Source: Leidyana gryllorum EB-2025a (taxonomy: Eukaryota; Protista; Apicomplexa). From it: a DNA stretch of 64,000 bases. The notes beneath the pieces are model-generated. The model was not told the DNA's origin, searched no databases, and was given only the letters and a program-made list of their open reading frames with translations. The stretch spans positions 124,001 to 188,000 of the forward strand of contig JBLWGC010000159.1 in the NCBI GenBank assembly GCA_048772705.1, written 5' to 3'. The position numbers were made by a program, and so were the translations under genes. Shown here piece after piece: positions 4,565-11,700 of this stretch (position 1 is its first letter; each line of letters begins with the position of its first letter).

Positions 4565-7288
4565 ATGACCCAGACATCTGGTGGGTACCAGGAAGGAGCC
4601 GTGACACCTAATTGTCCAGGCGGGACTCGACAAGAGTGTCAAAGAGGCAATTGGCCTGGCAGCATGGCTCGCTTACAACAGTGTGGTCTTGGAGGGATTG
4701 AGAATGCTGTTAAACTAATGGAACGCACGCCTACAGAGGGAGATGGAGCTCCACAAGATCGTCTGAGAAATACTGAAGGCCGCAAAGCAGCCTCAGCGCG
4801 AGGGTTTTTGCCGGAAAGTCCAAGCAATTCTCGCAAGTCCAGCAGTCGTCAGCCAACTCCCGAGGAACTTTGCTCGCCCGCTATCACGAAACTGCAGGAG
4901 CAGTGCAGCGCGGGGCCGTCGAACAGCAGCAGTGCCCGATGCGGAGGCAGCGGCCCGCTTGGTGGAATTCCCCGTGGTGTGCAAGTGGGCTCCGGCCAGT
5001 CATCAAGCCAGCACGAAAGCGGAAGCCGCTCGTCCTCCACCCCCGGAGCTGCGGGCGTGAAACAAGGCGTGGAGGGAAAGACGGACGATGCGTCTTATCC
5101 CGAAAAGCGAGTTAAAAAGCGCTCGTTGCAGCCAAAAGAAACCACGAAGAGCGGCCGAGGAGCTGACGTTGCTCGTCAGGTGGCTGCTAGGTCAGCAGCA
5201 CAGCCCATGCCTCCGAAAGTGAGGGTTGCCCGAGATCTGGATTATACCATCAGCAGACGTCCGTTGACGGTAGATCACCAGCATTACTACGTGGTCACTT
5301 ACGAGACCAAAGGACCGACCGTCTTGACGCACAAATTCAGCGACAATCCCCCTCCTGGATTGGACTACTTGATCGAGTCGATTGCTCTGGAACCCTGGAA
5401 GAAATGCGCGAACCCCGATCAAGCGGGCGATCAAGAGGAACCAGCATGCCCTTACCTGAGGCAGCCGTGTCCGCTGGACGAGATTTTGCAGGCTAGAGCT
5501 GCTGAAGCGACGCGTGACACAAGTGCTGAGAAGGCACCAAGCGCTGAAGCATCGCGATCGAATGGGAAGATGACAATTCCCAGTTCACTTGAGGGTACAC
5601 CATGCAGCCAGTGTCCAGAGTTACGAGCTTGTGGAGCCTCCGAGAGCTCCTCCTCTGTGGACAAAGTAGTCAGGATGAGCCCTTCTTCTTCAAGTGTATC
5701 CGCTGCCGGTGGGGAGGGCGATCAATCGTCCGGGTCGGGGCTGGTGGAACCTCCCCCGTCAGAGAATGGTCCGTCTAGCAGCTGCACGGAAAGCGAGCGA
5801 ACATCACAAATTTCGCATGTTAGAGAGCCAGCCGCGTCCAGTGAGGGGCCCAATATCACGAGTGTTTCGGATTGGTCAGACATCACCGCGTCCGACAATG
5901 TCCAGAATAATGAGGGACCACAGTGCAGAATTGTGAAGAAGCCGGTGGTCATAAAACTGCGTCGCAGTAAGGAGGGAGGAGAGACGAAGGGCAAATCCTT
6001 CAAGGTAGAGAAAGCTCAACAAGTGGATCTCGAGACCGAGGACCACGATGATACCGACTCCAAACGAGAAAGGGATTCGTACAGGTTCTCGCCATCGGAG
6101 GTTGACGAGATACTGGGAATGATGGATCAAATGGAAACCTTTATGGGCAGCGTGGCGTCCCGTCTGATCTGCCGTCAGCGACCCTCCAGTCGTGTCTGTG
6201 CGTGTCAAGAGGAGAAGAAGTCTTCTGATGAGGGGAAGGCGCCAGTGTCGGCCAGCGAGACATCCGCGCAGACTGAAGTTGGGCGCAGCCGGTCTCCGGC
6301 GGCACAGTTGACTCCTCCACGGGAGTTGGTGGGACTGTCCGCAGGGGAATGCCCCAGACTTGATATTTGCTCTTCTTCAAGGTCGTCTTCAGAGGAGTCG
6401 CGAGAGGAAGTTTCTCAGTCGTCGTCGTCGTTAGAGGAGTCCCAAGATGAGTCTTCCCAGTTGTCGTCGAGCGACCAAACACCGCAAGGCGAAGAAAGTC
6501 AAACAGAGTCAGAAAGCTGTGAGAGTGTGGATGCGGTGCAGGAGGCTGAGAGTCAAAAAGGGTCACCCCCGACCAGAGAATCTCCCTCGTCAATGTCTCC
6601 TCTGAGCTCGCTGATGACGTCGAGTTCTTCACAGACAGGAGGGGTCTCGAAGATGGCATGTGACCTTTTGGAGAAGGCTCAAGCGGAGTCGGCGAAGGAG
6701 GGCAGTGTCAGTCCCGCCGGTGCGAGCTCCTCTTCTTCTGCAGCATCAGGTTGCGACGAGGAGGCGACGTCGTCGGAAGACGGTGGGGAGGGAGAAGAAC
6801 AGTCTTATATCCGTCAGAAGTTCGAGCAGTTGAAAGGTAATCTACCGGGTATCCTGACTGGCGGCGATTCGAGGGCAAATGAAGCCGATTGCACCGGTAA
6901 GGAGGACCAAAACGGCAATACAGCGGGAGGTGAACAGGGGACTGACGCTGAGAAGCTCCCCGGGTTCTTCCGGCGGTTCCTCAACAGTGGTACTGGCCAA
7001 GGTGAAGAAGTGTGGAAGGCGAGGGACATCCACGCGGAGACCAGAGATGGAGAAGAGGAGGAGGGAACCAGTGAGGACGACTCGGAAGAGGGGGCGGAAA
7101 GAGACACAGATTCAGAGGAGGAGGAGACTTCCTGCCCAGTCGTTGAGAACTCAGCCGAAGGAGTGAAGTGCTGTGGTACTGAATGGGGCGATTTAGGTCT
7201 CAACAGGGAAGAACTCGCAGAACTCGGTCGTTACTACGAATCGTGCGCGAGGCACTGTGACCATTTGCTTGCACAGAAGGACGAGTGA
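4565..7288 (+). CDS. Hypothetical Ser/Glu-rich low-complexity protein (907 aa)
   Basis: Uninterrupted 2.7 kb ORF from ATG; no recognisable domain. Confidence 0.6.
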   Translation: MTQTSGGYQEGAVTPNCPGGTRQECQRGNWPGSMARLQQCGLGGIENAVKLMERTPTEGDGAPQDRLRNTEGRKAASARGFLPESPSNSRKSSSRQPTPEELCSPAITKLQEQCSAGPSNSSSARCGGSGPLGGIPRGVQVGSGQSSSQHESGSRSSSTPGAAGVKQGVEGKTDDASYPEKRVKKRSLQPKETTKSGRGADVARQVAARSAAQPMPPKVRVARDLDYTISRRPLTVDHQHYYVVTYETKGPTVLTHKFSDNPPPGLDYLIESIALEPWKKCANPDQAGDQEEPACPYLRQPCPLDEILQARAAEATRDTSAEKAPSAEASRSNGKMTIPSSLEGTPCSQCPELRACGASESSSSVDKVVRMSPSSSSVSAAGGEGDQSSGSGLVEPPPSENGPSSSCTESERTSQISHVREPAASSEGPNITSVSDWSDITASDNVQNNEGPQCRIVKKPVVIKLRRSKEGGETKGKSFKVEKAQQVDLETEDHDDTDSKRERDSYRFSPSEVDEILGMMDQMETFMGSVASRLICRQRPSSRVCACQEEKKSSDEGKAPVSASETSAQTEVGRSRSPAAQLTPPRELVGLSAGECPRLDICSSSRSSSEESREEVSQSSSSLEESQDESSQLSSSDQTPQGEESQTESESCESVDAVQEAESQKGSPPTRESPSSMSPLSSLMTSSSSQTGGVSKMACDLLEKAQAESAKEGSVSPAGASSSSSAASGCDEEATSSEDGGEGEEQSYIRQKFEQLKGNLPGILTGGDSRANEADCTGKEDQNGNTAGGEQGTDAEKLPGFFRRFLNSGTGQGEEVWKARDIHAETRDGEEEEGTSEDDSEEGAERDTDSEEEETSCPVVENSAEGVKCCGTEWGDLGLNREELAELGRYYESCARHCDHLLAQKDE

Positions 7289-7444
7289 TGATACACCTTT
7301 TTGGTCGTCCAACAGCCCGAAACCGTAAGCCGCTCTTCGCCTCCATCTCAAGTGGGAGGGGAAGAGACATTGATTCACTTAGTTGTGCACAGCCATCGTG
7401 TGGCCGGAGCAGTAAAGGTAAAAGCCGAGCTCGCTTGGTGAGAG

Positions 7445-7526
7445 CGATTGTATATAGTGGTGATACAAACTTTGGGGGGACGTCTCGATCTAAACTCTAA
7501 ACTGGTCAGCCTTTTCGCAAATAGCC
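7445..7526 (-). pseudogene. Degenerate copy of the U6 snRNA 3' half plus downstream flank (direct repeat of 14564-14636)
   Basis: AGTGGTG identical (7456-7462 vs 14577-14583); 17/19 match (7472-7490 vs 14591-14609); 10/11 match (7503-7513 vs 14615-14625); blocks are collinear, with a 7-nt TCTAAAC duplication in this copy. Confidence 0.8.
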
Positions 7527-7683
7527 CCTTTTTCCCTCAATGGTTCTCAACGACTAAGTGACAACTGAACCTAACCGAACCGAATTAGACCCCCAACCAC
7601 CACCACCTCCGTTCTCCGCATCCTTCTCCCCCTCCTTGCCCTCTCCCTCTCCCTCTTTCCCCTTCCACACGAACGATTGAGTG

Positions 7684-8745
7684 ATGGTCGCGTCCAGCGC
7701 TGTGACCGCCCCACCGGCCAAGGTGAAGCCCACCACGGTCAAACGATCTGGAGCGGGCCGGAAGACGCGGGCGAACACTAACGACTCTACAACGGAAGTG
7801 GACCACGACTCGTTTGACATGAATGATAACACCCCGTCTGGGCTGCGGCCACCTGATGCGATCACAGAAGAAATGGTCACCATCAAAGAAGTGACGAGGA
7901 TCAATGACGAACTATCAATGATCAAAGCCGAGATGTCGACATTAAAGGAAATGTTACTCGGCCTACGAAACCTTCTCGAACCCATCATACAGAAACACGG
8001 AAGTCTGGAAGACAGTATCCGTGAGATCAAAGAAGATCTCGAAACCATCAAGAAGGGAAACGGGCGAGCCCCCGGCCACAGTGCCGGGGGCGCCGTAGCA
8101 GAGCTGCCAGAGAAGCTCGACTCCTCCAACGACGACGCAGAAGTCATCGAACCCCCCCAGCGTCCATCGCAGCGAGTCACGAAGAAAGGAGCTGTTGCGA
8201 TGAGACAACAGACATACCGAGAAGCCCTGAAGCGAAATCTGCCCCTCGTGGGACGACCGAAGATCGACACTGTGGAGCTGCCGGAAGTGGCGACCCCGGA
8301 GTGCCTGTCAACAGCCTCATCGGAGGAGAAGTCTCCGGTGTACGGAGAGATACCGCGGGAGCAGTGGACGAGAGTATCGCGGCCCCCGACAACATATCGA
8401 CCCGCGATAATCAGCGTGAAACACCCACCCCGACCCCAGAGGGTCCCCGCACGGAAATTGCGGGAGTACCTGATGGAACACGGGATCAAGAAAGAGTCAA
8501 TCTACAGTATCCTGCGGTTGCACGGCGACCGGCTGTGGATAGTGGTGGATCGCAACGAGATGGAGGCGGTAGTATCCGCCCTAAGATTGAAGACCCCTTA
8601 CCTGAGTTACCAGAGTCCCAGCCTCCCTGCGCTGAGCAGCGAGGACGAGAAAAGGCAACTGGTAGCGCACATACAGCGAGTCGTCAAGCGAGAACGACAT
8701 CTCGGCACAAAGACTCTCCTTCAAGGAATGGTAGCCAACTGCTGA
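7684..8745 (+). CDS. Retrotransposon ORF1 (coiled coil plus possible RRM-like C-terminal domain)
   Basis: Heptad-like segment INDELSMIKAEMSTLKEMLLGLRNLL...IREIKEDLETIK; lies directly upstream of the APE-RT ORF; no CCHC knuckle seen. Confidence 0.8.
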   Translation: MVASSAVTAPPAKVKPTTVKRSGAGRKTRANTNDSTTEVDHDSFDMNDNTPSGLRPPDAITEEMVTIKEVTRINDELSMIKAEMSTLKEMLLGLRNLLEPIIQKHGSLEDSIREIKEDLETIKKGNGRAPGHSAGGAVAELPEKLDSSNDDAEVIEPPQRPSQRVTKKGAVAMRQQTYREALKRNLPLVGRPKIDTVELPEVATPECLSTASSEEKSPVYGEIPREQWTRVSRPPTTYRPAIISVKHPPRPQRVPARKLREYLMEHGIKKESIYSILRLHGDRLWIVVDRNEMEAVVSALRLKTPYLSYQSPSLPALSSEDEKRQLVAHIQRVVKRERHLGTKTLLQGMVANC

Positions 8746-11700
8746 AGGGGAAGAAGATTCGATCGATTCGTCTCGGAACACTGAACTGCGCAGGATCATT
8801 GCAAAGCAAAATCCCTCAGCTGCGTATTTTGAGCGTTCAATACGAACTTGACATATTGGTATTGACTGAGACTCGAAAGACTCTCACTGCTGACGTGGAA
8901 GGATGGAGCGTGAGTTCCAAAGGAGGTCAACACTCGGGGGTCGGTATTATGGCCCCACCTCAATGGAAGGTGACGCATCATAACGAACGCATCTGTGTCG
9001 CTCGGAGGAGCCCCTTCACTGTGGTCGCTATGTATACTCCCTCAAACATTGAGGGAACTGCCGTAAAAGAAGCCGAGAGGCGCGAGACGTGGAGACTGGT
9101 GGATGACATTCTGGGCGATGTACTTGAGAACTCAGATGACGCGGTTATACTCGCTGGAGACGTCAATGTCGCCATCGAGAGGACTGTAAGATACCCCAAG
9201 TTACCGAATACCGCTGTTTTTGCGGACTTGGTGAAGAAGCACAAACTTTGTATGTTGGACTCTGGTCCCACCTGGGAACAGTATAACGGCTGTAGAAGGA
9301 CGCTCGATCGCATATGTATCAGACGGGCCTGGAACACAGGCCGTAGGGCCTTCTCAATTTGGCTCGAAGAGATCACCACAGACCACGCGATGCTCGTGGC
9401 CGACATTGCGACGTCCCAGCGACGTCAGAGATACGAAGCGAAAGGCGGCTCGGAAAGAGACGATGAGTGGGAGAAGCTGATGGAAGTAGTGCCACAAGTC
9501 TCCACTGCCCCAACGGTACAGAATCTGTTACTCGAAGCGGCTCAGAACACTGCGGCCGCCGTAACGGCATTCCAGATGTGGAGGGCGCGATCCCTCACCC
9601 GCCAAAGTATCGGTCAGCTGGTCGAAGGGTGCTACACCTCGGAGAGTACTGCCAACGCCATAGCCAACTATCTCCACAAACTCTGGGGAGGCAGTGGGGA
9701 GAAGTGCAAAAGTGGAGATCCACCCGCAGCTGGGGAGCCGAGCCTTATGGCGAGAGTGTCCCACGAGACGGGAGATCCACCTGCAGCTGGGGAGCCGAGC
9801 CTTATGGCGAAAGTGTCCCACGAGGACGTCCAATCCCTCATTAAGGGATTGAACCGCAAAGCGGCGCCCGGACCCGACCGAGTGACCCCAGAGCAATTAC
9901 TGACGGCAGACGAGTCGACAGCTTTACGGATTGCGGAACTGATGAATCTCTATTTGAGGAGTGCAGTCACTTTCCCGAGTTGGAGTAAATCCAAAACGAC
10001 ACTGCTGCCCAAAGAGGACCCCCCGTGTCCCACGACAAAGCTGCGACCCATCTCTGTTCCCTCTATCGGGAGCAAACTGGTAGCCGCCCTCACCGACCAA
10101 AGGGTACAGCCACTCGTTCAAAAGGCTTTGCATCCGAGCCAACACGGCTTCCGGAAAGGTCACTCCCCACTGAAAGCTGTGGAAGTGTTGATCGGCGAAA
10201 TGGGGCTGAGAAGTCGCGGCTGTGTAATCAGCACCGACTTTGCGAAGGCGTTTGACAGTGTCGAACACGAACCACTGCGGCAATTGGCCACAGAGATCGA
10301 CCCATATTTCGGGTGGATAGTCGGGAAGATGTACACTGACGCTAAGACCACAATAAAGTACGGACGCGACCGTCGAGAGATCAGACTGCGAAAGGGTGTC
10401 AGACAGGGAGATCCTCTGTCTCCCACTCTCTTCAACTTGGTTATGGCTCATATCTCAAAGAATCTGCCCTTCGATCGGTGCAAACCCATCTCGGTCGCAG
10501 ACGATATGTTACTGATTTGTGGTGACGCAGAAGACGCAAAAGCGTCTCTGGAAAGCCTCCGATCTTTGGGGTCCGCCCTGGGGATTAAGCTGCAGCCCGA
10601 AAAGTGCGCAGTAATGCCACTGGGAACAGCGAGTGAGGAGGAGTTCCGCTCACTGAACCTCAGCTGCAAATCGGAGCTCAAGTTTATGGGTATTGTTGTT
10701 GACCGAGAATTGACGTTCGATAGCGAACTGCAACGCAGAGACAAAGCGGCCGCAGAGGCGTTCGAGAAGTTCTTCAAAGATCTCAAAGCTTTCTGCAGTG
10801 TCTATGACGAACTCCCAGCGCTCCTTACGCTGCGACTTTACTGTTCCTACGTGGAGAGCGTCTGGCATTATGGCCATAAATCGATACGTCTCAGTGATGC
10901 CCAACAAGAAACGATTGTGCGACGAAAGATTCGCCAAGTAAGAGAGCTGTTCGGAAAGAGCCGCGTGGCTCTGATGACAGATCGGGAAGTGATCAATTGG
11001 ACAACAGCGACCCTAAAGGCAATAACGCCGATGGCCTATCCGCCGAGCATTTATGTGAAGGGAAGCAATGTCACCGCGACCATCGTTGCGGCCCGAAAGA
11101 GACGCACCTATCTGGCGAGACTCGAACGCGAGAAGAAACTGAGCGAGAAATCGTACCTCGGCGGCTTCCGCTACCAGCCGAAGCGCCTGCGCGGCGACGA
11201 AGGGGAGGATGGAGACGGGGGAGAGGTGATCGAGGAAGCGACGGAGCGGACTGAGAGAGTGTCGATATTCGCAGTGAGCTGTGGAATTGACACCGACGGC
11301 GACCAGGCGGCCAAACGGAGACGGCTCGAGCCGAGTCTGAGGGACTTGGAAACGGGACCGGGAACGTTGAGTCCGACAGCCGCAGAAGTGGTGAGTCCCG
11401 CAGAAGTGACTCAGCCCCCGAGACGACCGCCGCACAGAGAAGCCGTGCGTGCCATTGAACGAGAGATGGGCCCGCGTCCACCGATGATGGAAGCTCCCTC
11501 AGCTTTCGAGGGGCCCCCCGAACCCTCAAAGGGGTGTTGGATTCCCAACAGAGTGTGGCTGGAAATGGTTGCCAGAGGATTGGGGCGATATGACATTGAA
11601 GAAATCGTCCCGCAACTGCCCGTAGAAGTGGACGACGGCACGAAATACTCAAAACCGCACCTCCTACAGGACTCTCTGAGAGCGCAAGAAGGCCGATACC

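What the first reader, a model, noticed from the sequence alone, without database searches (positions are those of the whole stretch)
7445..7526. Degenerate ~75-80 bp U6 3'-half repeat at the 5' junction, unexpectedly diverged next to intact ORFs
Seen: collinear matches to 14564-14636 (7/7, 17/19 and 10/11 blocks) covering U6 from the ISL to past the terminator, but with indels and changes at conserved ISL positions. A fresh target-site duplication should be identical. Inference, three options: (a) an old, very long TSD beside an element kept intact by selection or domestication; (b) the segment is the element's own 5' end, so its RNA begins with U6-antisense sequence that could anneal to target DNA during integration or pair with U6 as U4 does; (c) the element's 3' end carries a replacement U6 3' half, as tRNA-targeting integrative elements do, and this is the displaced, decayed original.
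Basis: partly seen in the sequence, partly recalled or inferred. Interest (0 to 1): 0.82.

Follow-up and report, generated by a model that had tools for sequence, protein, structure and literature searches.

The report
Decayed U6 duplicate beside a LINE
A jumping gene (LINE retrotransposon) landed just behind a U6 spliceosomal RNA gene and duplicated the gene's last ~55 bases plus ~22 bases of flank; the spare copy has since decayed while the working U6 gene and the jumping gene's own reading frames stayed intact, which makes this a likely first U6-directed LINE with an unusually long, gene-sparing target duplication.

Summary
Window 7445-7529 is a degenerate direct copy of 14564-14640, which is U6 nt 55-109 plus 22 nt of 3' flank, read antisense. 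The alignment has 60 matches, 11 mismatches and 10 gap events. Its score is 49 against 9.5±3.9 for shuffles (0 of 3000).

Between the two copies lies a single-copy APE+RT LINE (about 7530-14563, + strand) with open ORF1 and ORF2.

A related organism's orthologous locus has the same upstream gene followed by an antisense U6, with no LINE and no second U6 piece. The U6 is therefore ancestral and the LINE is an insertion.

The LINE has no close relative anywhere (best 34%). Two of six distant relatives fetched sit in or against U2 snRNA genes, one with a perfect 11-bp duplication. This supports snRNA-gene targeting in the wider group.

Best reading: a long target-site duplication that left U6 whole, whose orphaned copy then decayed. 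The same decay on ORF2 would give about 39 stop codons, so the LINE is either under selection or younger than the repeat looks. This is unresolved.

A maintained U6-pairing role is disfavoured, because complementarity is nearly lost.

Other notes on this same window describe the same LINE. Nothing like it was found on other DNA in the scan.

The parts
7445..7529 (-). Left, degenerate copy of U6 nt ~55-109 plus ~22 nt of U6 3' flank (U6 sense is the minus strand). The robust core is 7456-7519.
   Evidence: 60 matches, 11 mismatches, 10 gap events against 14564-14640; 0 of 3000 shuffles reach the score. The Rfam U6 model does not detect it, even at E<=10.
7490..7503 (.). A 7-bp tandem duplication (CTAAACT x2) inside the left copy. 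It accounts for the largest indel.
   Evidence: Read directly from the sequence and the alignments.
7530..14563 (+). APE-type non-LTR retrotransposon. Its ends are inferred from the ends of the repeat. It has no poly(A) tail.
   Evidence: Pfam Exo_endo_phos and RVT_1 in ORF2. It is single-copy in the 15.5-Mb assembly. The nearest relative is 34% identical.
7684..8745 (+). LINE ORF1 (353 aa from the ATG), open.
   Evidence: weak coiled-coil hit only.
8301..14180 (+). LINE ORF2 reading frame (1959 aa), open, in the -1 frame relative to ORF1 with a ~445-nt overlap. APE lies at aa 160-355 and RT at aa 570-798.
   Evidence: The RT motif VADD is shared with the nearest relative P0008.
14564..14640 (-). 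Right, intact copy of the repeat: 22 nt of U6 3' flank, the T-run (14587-14590) and U6 nt 55-108.
   Evidence: It is 57/59 identical to the relative's syntenic U6 and 85/86 identical to the tRNA-array U6 genes.
14586..14694 (-). Solo U6 snRNA gene. ACAGAGA, the AGC triad and the ISL are intact. It has its own 5' stem-loop variant and a TTTT terminator.
   Evidence: Rfam RF00026, 80.3 bits, E 8.6e-19; comparison with the 7 other U6 genes.
14561..14596 (.). Hairpin spanning the right junction. It pairs the bases just before and at the start of the repeat with the U6 3'-terminal region.
   Evidence: -15.9 kcal/mol, z -2.85, 2 of 200 shuffles.
4565..7288 (+). Upstream orphan gene (907 aa), used as the synteny anchor.
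   Evidence: Its homologue P0007 is 40% identical. On contig L013 it is followed after 600 bp by an antisense U6 with no LINE.

Best explanation
The segment is the orphaned half of a long (about 77-85 bp) target-site duplication. It was made when an APE-type LINE integrated, antisense, about 22 bp downstream of the terminator of an ancestral solo U6 gene.

Inferred mechanism. The element's endonuclease nicked the U6-sense (bottom) strand just beyond the gene, and reverse transcription was primed from that nick. The top strand was cut about 77 bp away inside U6, near the AGC triad and the start of the ISL. Filling in the stagger duplicated the 3' half of U6, its terminator and its flank.

The right copy stayed joined to the U6 5' half and promoter, so the gene survived the insertion and remains under selection. 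The left copy was cut off from any promoter and drifted: about 15% substitutions, several small indels and one 7-bp slippage duplication.

What is shown: the repeat is real, U6 is ancestral at this locus, and the LINE is an insertion. What is inferred: the two nick positions, the age of the insertion, and the conclusion that the LINE's frames are held open by selection (continued activity and turnover in the population, or co-option).
For: - The repeat is significant and is the best match in the window.
- It directly brackets a complete two-ORF APE+RT element.
- An orthologous locus in a related organism has the same upstream gene, a 600-bp spacer and an antisense U6. It has no LINE and no significant second U6-like piece.
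- The left copy shares the CACCACT motif and further flank bases of this locus. It also shares this locus's C at the CCAC[C/T]C position. The flank and T variant of the 7 array U6 genes do not match, so the left copy was copied locally from DNA and not from U6 RNA.
- All differences map to the left copy: the right copy is 97-99% identical to the other U6 genes.
- A random insertion within ~25 bp of one of 8 U6 genes in 15.5 Mb has a probability of about 1e-4. This is my own arithmetic.
- Two of six distant relatives fetched lie in or against U2 snRNA genes, one of them with a perfect 11-bp TSD.
Against: - A repeat 85% identical with 10 gap events sits beside 1959-aa and 353-aa open frames. The same substitution level on ORF2 would give about 39 stops. 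A simple 'old neutral insertion' is therefore impossible, and an extra assumption is needed (selection on the element, or faster decay of the repeat).
- The ratio of gap events to mismatches (10:11) is odd for ordinary decay.
- The length (~80 bp) is far above usual LINE TSDs. The U2-associated relative has 11 bp.
- There is only one copy, so neither target specificity nor the element's ends can be confirmed from a second junction.
- The outer ~10 nt of the repeat on each side are not individually significant.
Confidence: 0.5

Rival explanations
1. Element-borne leader. The U6-like stretch is transcribed as the 5' end of the element RNA and is inherited through the cDNA. At each integration into an empty allele of this locus, the cDNA end anneals imperfectly to the exposed target strand, as proposed for R2 elements whose RNA keeps upstream 28S sequence. 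The diverged version is then passed on by one strand of the heteroduplex. The present insertion can therefore be young while its repeat looks old.
For: It removes the paradox of intact ORFs beside a decayed repeat. The many small indels fit repeated error-prone RNA/RT passage. There is a precedent for target sequence on the 5' end guiding second-strand priming in R2 (PMC3774820). AGTGGTG is perfect (7/7) at the outer edge and could be the true short TSD.
Against: The left copy carries this locus's own 3' flank, so the donor would have to be the same locus. Complementarity to U6 is almost at shuffle level, with a longest shared word of 8 nt, so annealing would be weak. No ribozyme or significant structure lies at the 5' junction. 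The element is antisense to U6, so R2-type co-transcription with the target is impossible. There is no second copy in the genome.
Confidence: 0.2
2. Relic of an earlier event. The partial U6 duplicate was made by an older insertion of the same lineage at this preferred site. The resident element was later renewed, by cDNA-mediated conversion or by re-insertion plus recombination between elements. The ORFs are therefore young and the outer repeat is old.
For: It explains the age mismatch. Site-specific elements hit the same site repeatedly; tandem and recombined arrangements are described for U2-specific Utopia (PMC4640811).
Against: No remnant of an older element, and no fresh second repeat, is seen at either junction. 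There is no other copy in the genome to act as donor.
Confidence: 0.13
3. Replacement 3' half. The element RNA ends with read-through antisense U6 sequence. Integration occurs inside U6 near nt 55. The right copy is supplied by the element, and the left copy is the displaced original 3' end.
For: The geometry is compatible. The hairpin spanning the right junction could be an element 3' structure. One distant relative abuts a complete U2 5' end.
Against: It has the same age paradox as a TSD. The left and right copies share the non-U6 flank, which a foreign replacement would not be expected to match. The empty-site flank in the relative is too diverged to decide. No positive evidence was found.
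Confidence: 0.05
4. Accelerated divergence of a recent TSD. Right after insertion, the upstream gene's 3' UTR or the LINE leader would have carried ~55 nt of perfect antisense to U6 within the ~80-nt repeat, and the 80-bp direct repeats would also have promoted excision of the element. Selection against U6 pairing, or survivorship of copies with diverged repeats, sped up the change. The insertion is then younger than it looks.
For: Pairing potential to U6 has dropped nearly to random. The upstream gene runs in the same direction and ends 157 bp before the repeat.
Against: This is inference only. There are no expression data and no comparison set.
Confidence: 0.08
5. Chance similarity, or a U6/LINE chimeric retrocopy made by template switching.
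For: None beyond the short length of the segment.
Against: 0 of 2000 and 0 of 3000 shuffles reach the score. A template-switch chimera would carry U6 in the same sense as the LINE and no DNA flank beyond the terminator. Here the fragment is antisense and includes ~22 nt of flank.
Confidence: 0.01

Closest known systems
Keno (APE-type, Tx1-clade LINE specific for U2 snRNA genes) and Utopia (RLE-type, also U2-specific)
   Same: A LINE lodged at a spliceosomal snRNA gene, at low copy number and without a poly(A) tail. Two distant relatives of this element (about 28% identical in APE+RT) sit in or at U2 genes: L017 with an 11-bp TSD, and L018.
   Different: The target is U6, not U2. A 2015 survey listed only Keno and Utopia (U2), Dada-U1 and Dada-U6 as snRNA-gene-specific transposons, so no U6 LINE was known then (PMC4640811). 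My later literature search found none either. This element is antisense to the gene and sits behind it, and the long duplication leaves the gene intact. Keno and Utopia split U2. Clade membership was not tested against named reference sequences.
R2 elements whose RNA keeps upstream 28S sequence (Eickbush et al. 2013, PMC3774820)
   Same: Target-derived sequence lies next to the element's 5' end and could guide 5' joining by annealing.
   Different: R2 is co-transcribed with its target in the sense direction and cut by an HDV-like ribozyme. Here the element is antisense to U6, no ribozyme was found, and the target-like stretch is badly degraded.
Dictyostelium TRE3-type LINEs, which insert downstream of Pol III (tRNA) genes (from my own knowledge, not checked here)
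   Same: An APE LINE in a compact genome, parked just downstream of a Pol III-transcribed gene without breaking it.
   Different: TRE elements are position-specific through Pol III factors, occur in many copies at many tRNA genes, and make 13-16 bp TSDs. Here there is one copy, none in the tRNA/U6 arrays, and a repeat of about 80 bp.
Dada-U6 DNA transposons
   Same: U6 genes as the target.
   Different: Dada is a DNA transposon with a transposase and 6-7 bp TSDs inside the gene (PMC3706591, listed; details from my own knowledge). This element is an APE+RT retrotransposon.
U6/L1 chimeric retropseudogenes
   Same: U6 sequence joined to the 5' side of LINE sequence.
   Different: Those carry full-length U6 in the same sense as a 5'-truncated L1 and derive from U6 RNA. 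Here only the 3' half is present, it is antisense, it includes non-transcribed flank, and the LINE is full length.

Membership tests
Target-site duplication of a non-LTR retrotransposon | Direct repeats immediately flank the element's 5' and 3' ends | tested here: met
   7445-7529 and 14564-14640 bracket the ORF1/ORF2 element. The element's own ends are inferred from the repeat, so the test is partly circular.
Target-site duplication of a non-LTR retrotransposon | The empty site carries the repeated stretch once | tested here: met
   The orthologous locus L013 in a related organism has the gene, a 600-bp spacer and one antisense U6. There is no significant U6-like piece in the spacer. Caveats: the relative is distant (40% aa identity in the anchor gene) and the contig ends inside U6.
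Target-site duplication of a non-LTR retrotransposon | The repeats are identical or nearly so when the element is intact | tested here: not met
   85% identity over aligned pairs, with 10 gap events.
Target-site duplication of a non-LTR retrotransposon | Usual length of a few to about 25 bp | tested here: not met
   About 77-85 bp. The U2-associated relative L017 has 11 bp.
Target-specific APE-type LINE (Keno/Tx1-like) | APE endonuclease and RT in ORF2 | tested here: met
   Pfam PF03372 and PF00078.
Target-specific APE-type LINE (Keno/Tx1-like) | Several independent copies at the same position of the same target | tested here: not met
   There is one copy only. The 7 other U6 genes are unoccupied. 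No U6 was found next to 86 related loci.
Target-specific APE-type LINE (Keno/Tx1-like) | Phylogenetic placement inside the named clade | not testable with these tools
   No named reference sequences were on hand. The evidence is only that hits ranked 3 and 5 of 1.84 billion proteins are U2-associated.
R2-type 5' target sequence with ribozyme processing | Sense co-transcription with the target and a self-cleaving ribozyme at the 5' junction | tested here: not met
   The element is antisense to U6. Rfam finds no ribozyme at E<=10 in 7250-7750, and the fold z-score is -1.08.
U6/LINE chimeric retrocopy | U6 RNA-derived sequence in the same sense as the LINE, ending at the U6 3' end | tested here: not met
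   The fragment is antisense and extends ~22 nt beyond the terminator into flank.

The most novel reading that the evidence does not exclude
The element is a locus-faithful, U6-directed LINE with a gene-sparing integration mode. Widely staggered nicks regenerate the whole U6 gene at each insertion. The U6-derived stretch has become part of the element's transcribed leader and is passed on through the cDNA, so that it helps 5' end joining or retro-homing into empty U6 alleles. This would be a retrotransposon counterpart of integrative elements that rebuild the tRNA gene they enter.
Probability: 0.15. Interest if true: 0.8.

Novelty: new variant of a known kind. Interest (0 to 1): 0.58.

Why it matters
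Transposons specific for snRNA genes are rare. A 2015 survey lists none of the LINE type for U6, and my literature search found none since. A LINE that enters at a U6 gene yet leaves the gene whole, through an ~80-bp duplication, would show a new way for a retrotransposon to use an essential low-copy gene as a safe harbour. It sits in a very compact parasite genome that otherwise has almost no such elements. The mismatch between a decayed repeat and intact reading frames also makes a concrete, testable case. Either a single-copy LINE is being kept by selection, or target-derived sequence can be inherited as part of the element.

Tried and rejected
- **Chance similarity:** rejected by shuffles.
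- **Other copies of the element or of its 5' junction in the genome:** none.
- **Other orphan U6 3' fragments in the genome:** none detected. Sensitivity is limited, because the left copy itself is not found by that search.
- **Close relatives of the LINE, to compare junctions:**
  - Word-based protein search: best 25%.
  - Exhaustive representative search: best 34%, on a 4.6-kb contig without ends.
  - Metagenome scan: 80 loci, all at or below 38% and mostly 21-36%, none with U6 or U2 by blastn.
- **Exact look-up of ORF1 and the upstream gene in public assemblies, to find strains or transcripts:** not on record.
- **A second U6-like piece in the relative's spacer:** a 10/10 word (GTCTCGATCT) lies at the same distance from the stop codon as in the window, but it is not significant.
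- **Extension of the repeat further left, to GTGAGAG (7438-7444 / 14545-14551):** not significant alone.
- **Extension into the ACAGAGA region:** nothing.
- **Ribozyme or stable structure at the 5' junction:** none. The inverted repeat 7375-7396 / 7540-7561 is within chance expectation.
- **A conserved hairpin in both repeat copies:** the right hairpin is significant, but the left one is not (z +0.86) and its arms are not in register.
- **Using the relative's flank to decide option (c):** too diverged.
- **Naming the LINE clade:** the cluster names of the top hits were uninformative.

Full report
**What is there**

Rfam finds one U6 snRNA gene in the window, at 14586-14694 on the minus strand (80.3 bits, E 8.6e-19). 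To its left, on the plus strand, lie two overlapping open frames. ORF1 runs from 7684 to 8745. ORF2 runs from 8301 to 14180 (1959 aa) and has an APE endonuclease at aa 160-355 and a reverse transcriptase at aa 570-798. This is an APE-type non-LTR retrotransposon (LINE) lying tail-to-tail with U6. It is single-copy in the 15.5-Mb assembly.

I did not check it.

**The observation**

Sequence positions here count from the ruler label as the first base of each line. The left segment 7445-7529 aligns collinearly with 14564-14640.

- The local score is 37, against 15.2±2.2 for dinucleotide shuffles (0 of 2000). This is the best non-self match of the U6 locus anywhere in the window.
- A global alignment gives 60 matches, 11 mismatches and 10 gap events, score 49 against 9.5±3.9 (0 of 3000).
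- One indel is a plain 7-bp tandem duplication, CTAAACT x2, at 7490-7503.

In U6 terms the repeat covers nt ~55-109 (from the AGC triad and ISL to the T-run) plus about 22 nt of DNA beyond the terminator.

The robust core is 7456-7519 / 14577-14630. The outermost ~10 nt on each side are probable but not significant alone. The Rfam U6 model no longer recognises the left copy.

**Which copy changed**

The genome has seven other U6 genes. They lie in an ~11.7-kb tandem unit packed with tRNA genes. Their flanks, 5' stem-loop and TTTTTT terminator differ from those of the window's U6.

The window's right copy is 85/86 identical to these array genes over nt 23-108. It is 57/59 identical to the U6 of a related organism. 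All the differences therefore arose on the left copy.

The left copy shares two features with this locus and not with the array genes. One is the CACCACT motif and further flank bases. The other is the C at CCAC[C/T]C. It was therefore copied from this locus's DNA, not from U6 RNA and not from an array gene.

**An empty site**

The upstream orphan gene (4565-7288) has one homologue in 5.8 billion proteins: P0007, 40% identical. Its 5-kb contig (L013, Logan ERR10900114) shows the gene, a 600-bp spacer and then an antisense U6 whose 3' end faces the gene. There is no LINE. The spacer holds no significant U6-like fragment.

The solo U6 is therefore ancestral at this locus, and the LINE with the extra U6 piece is an insertion state. 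The spacers themselves are too diverged to align.

**Relatives of the element**

- No close relative exists in any collection searched. The word search gave 25% at best. The exhaustive search of 1.84 billion representatives gave 34% (P0008), on a 4.6-kb metagenome contig without ends. A metagenome scan gave 80 loci, none above 38% and most at 21-36%.
- P0008 shares the -1 ORF1/ORF2 overlap of ~450 nt and the unusual VADD in the RT active-site motif. These are lineage traits, not decay.
- Of six distant relatives whose contigs I could read, two are at U2 snRNA genes.
  - In L017 the element sits inside U2 stem-loop I, with a perfect 11-bp duplication (TTAAAGGCTTT).
  - In L018 the element's 3' end abuts U2 nt 1.
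- None of 86 related loci carries a U6.

The nearest group therefore includes snRNA-gene-specific LINEs. Together with the ~1e-4 chance of a random hit next to one of eight U6 genes, this makes targeting of U6 likely. With one copy it is not proven.

A 2015 survey lists only Keno and Utopia (U2), Dada-U1 and Dada-U6 as snRNA-gene-specific transposons (PMC4640811). My search of later literature found no U6 LINE.

**Mechanism**

The simplest account is a long target-site duplication.

1. The U6-sense strand was nicked about 22 bp behind the terminator, and this nick primed reverse transcription.
2. The other strand was cut about 77 bp away, inside U6.
3. Fill-in duplicated the 3' half of the gene with its terminator.
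4. The right copy remained part of a complete U6 gene, with ACAGAGA, AGC, ISL, 5' stem-loop and T-run all present. The left copy, cut off from the promoter, drifted.

The nick positions are inferred from the ends of the repeat.

**The paradox**

If ORF2 had the left copy's substitution level, about 39 stop codons would be expected, and far more frameshifts. Both frames are open. There are three ways out.

- The element has been under purifying selection at this locus, through continued activity with turnover in the population or through co-option.
- The present element is younger than the repeat. The repeat may travel with the element as a leader and be inherited through the cDNA, as in the R2 annealing model (PMC3774820). 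Alternatively, an older resident may have been renewed.
- The repeat decayed faster than neutral DNA, for example through selection against an antisense-U6 stretch in the upstream gene's 3' UTR, or through survivorship of copies whose diverged repeats no longer recombine the element out.

The data at hand cannot separate these.

One functional version can be marked down. The left copy's predicted duplex with U6 is -49 kcal/mol, against -39±5 for shuffles and -118 for a perfect antisense. The longest shared words are 8, 7 and 6 nt. A role that needs extended pairing with U6 RNA or DNA is therefore not being maintained.

No ribozyme or significant fold lies at the 5' junction. A significant hairpin does span the right junction (14561-14596, z -2.85). 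Its meaning is open: it could be the natural U6 3' flank or an element 3' structure.

**Verdict**

- Option (b) survives only in a passive form.
- Option (c) is unsupported but not refuted.
- This is a new variant of a known kind, a target-associated APE LINE. Its features are a new target (U6), an antisense position behind the gene, and a long duplication that spares the gene.
- Single-copy status and the lack of close relatives limit what can be proved.

Noticed in passing
L016 = G000:C66:12500-22499 (other contigs: C215, C4, C27, C38, C61): The seven other U6 genes lie in an ~11.67-kb tandem unit. A 10-kb stretch of it holds 22 tRNA genes plus U6. This is a dense Pol III gene array reminiscent of Entamoeba tRNA arrays. 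Other first-reader notes mention it as well.
   Followed up: partly
window 8301-8745; L014 77-527: ORF2 is open in the -1 frame for ~445 nt before the ORF1 stop and has no ATG before the APE domain. The nearest relative (P0008, on contig L014) has the same -1 overlap of ~450 nt. This suggests a conserved -1 frameshift or a similar coupling.
   Followed up: partly
window about 10494-10505; P0008: The RT active-site motif reads VADD instead of Y/FADD. P0008 also has VADD, while more distant relatives have YADD, FADD, YVDD or WVDD. VADD is therefore a lineage trait, not a lesion.
   Followed up: yes
L017 1-31 and 4252-4439; L018 3525-3605: Two unnamed metagenome/SRA contigs carry APE+RT LINEs specific for U2 snRNA genes. 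L017 is inserted in U2 stem-loop I with a perfect 11-bp TSD. In L018 the 3' end abuts a complete U2 5' end. Neither has a poly(A) tail.
   Followed up: partly
window 14561-14596: A hairpin spans the LINE/U6 junction and pairs flank bases with the U6 3'-terminal ACCCAAUU region (-15.9 kcal/mol, z -2.85). The relative's empty site has only a weak 7-bp analogue (z +0.22).
   Followed up: partly
window 14675-14694 versus L003-L009: The solo U6 and the array U6 genes have completely different 5' stem-loop sequences, but both form a perfect GC-rich stem. Nucleotides 23-108 differ at one base. The pattern looks like compensatory evolution of two long-separated functional U6 types.
   Followed up: no
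window 9714-9824 and 12704-12825: There are in-frame tandem repeats inside ORF2: a 57-bp unit x2 at 96% identity, and 15-bp units x6 or more in the long C-terminal tail.
   Followed up: no
window 5000-17000: The block containing the two flanking orphan genes and the LINE has a positive AT skew on the plus strand (0.1-0.49). The rest of the window is near 0.
   Followed up: no
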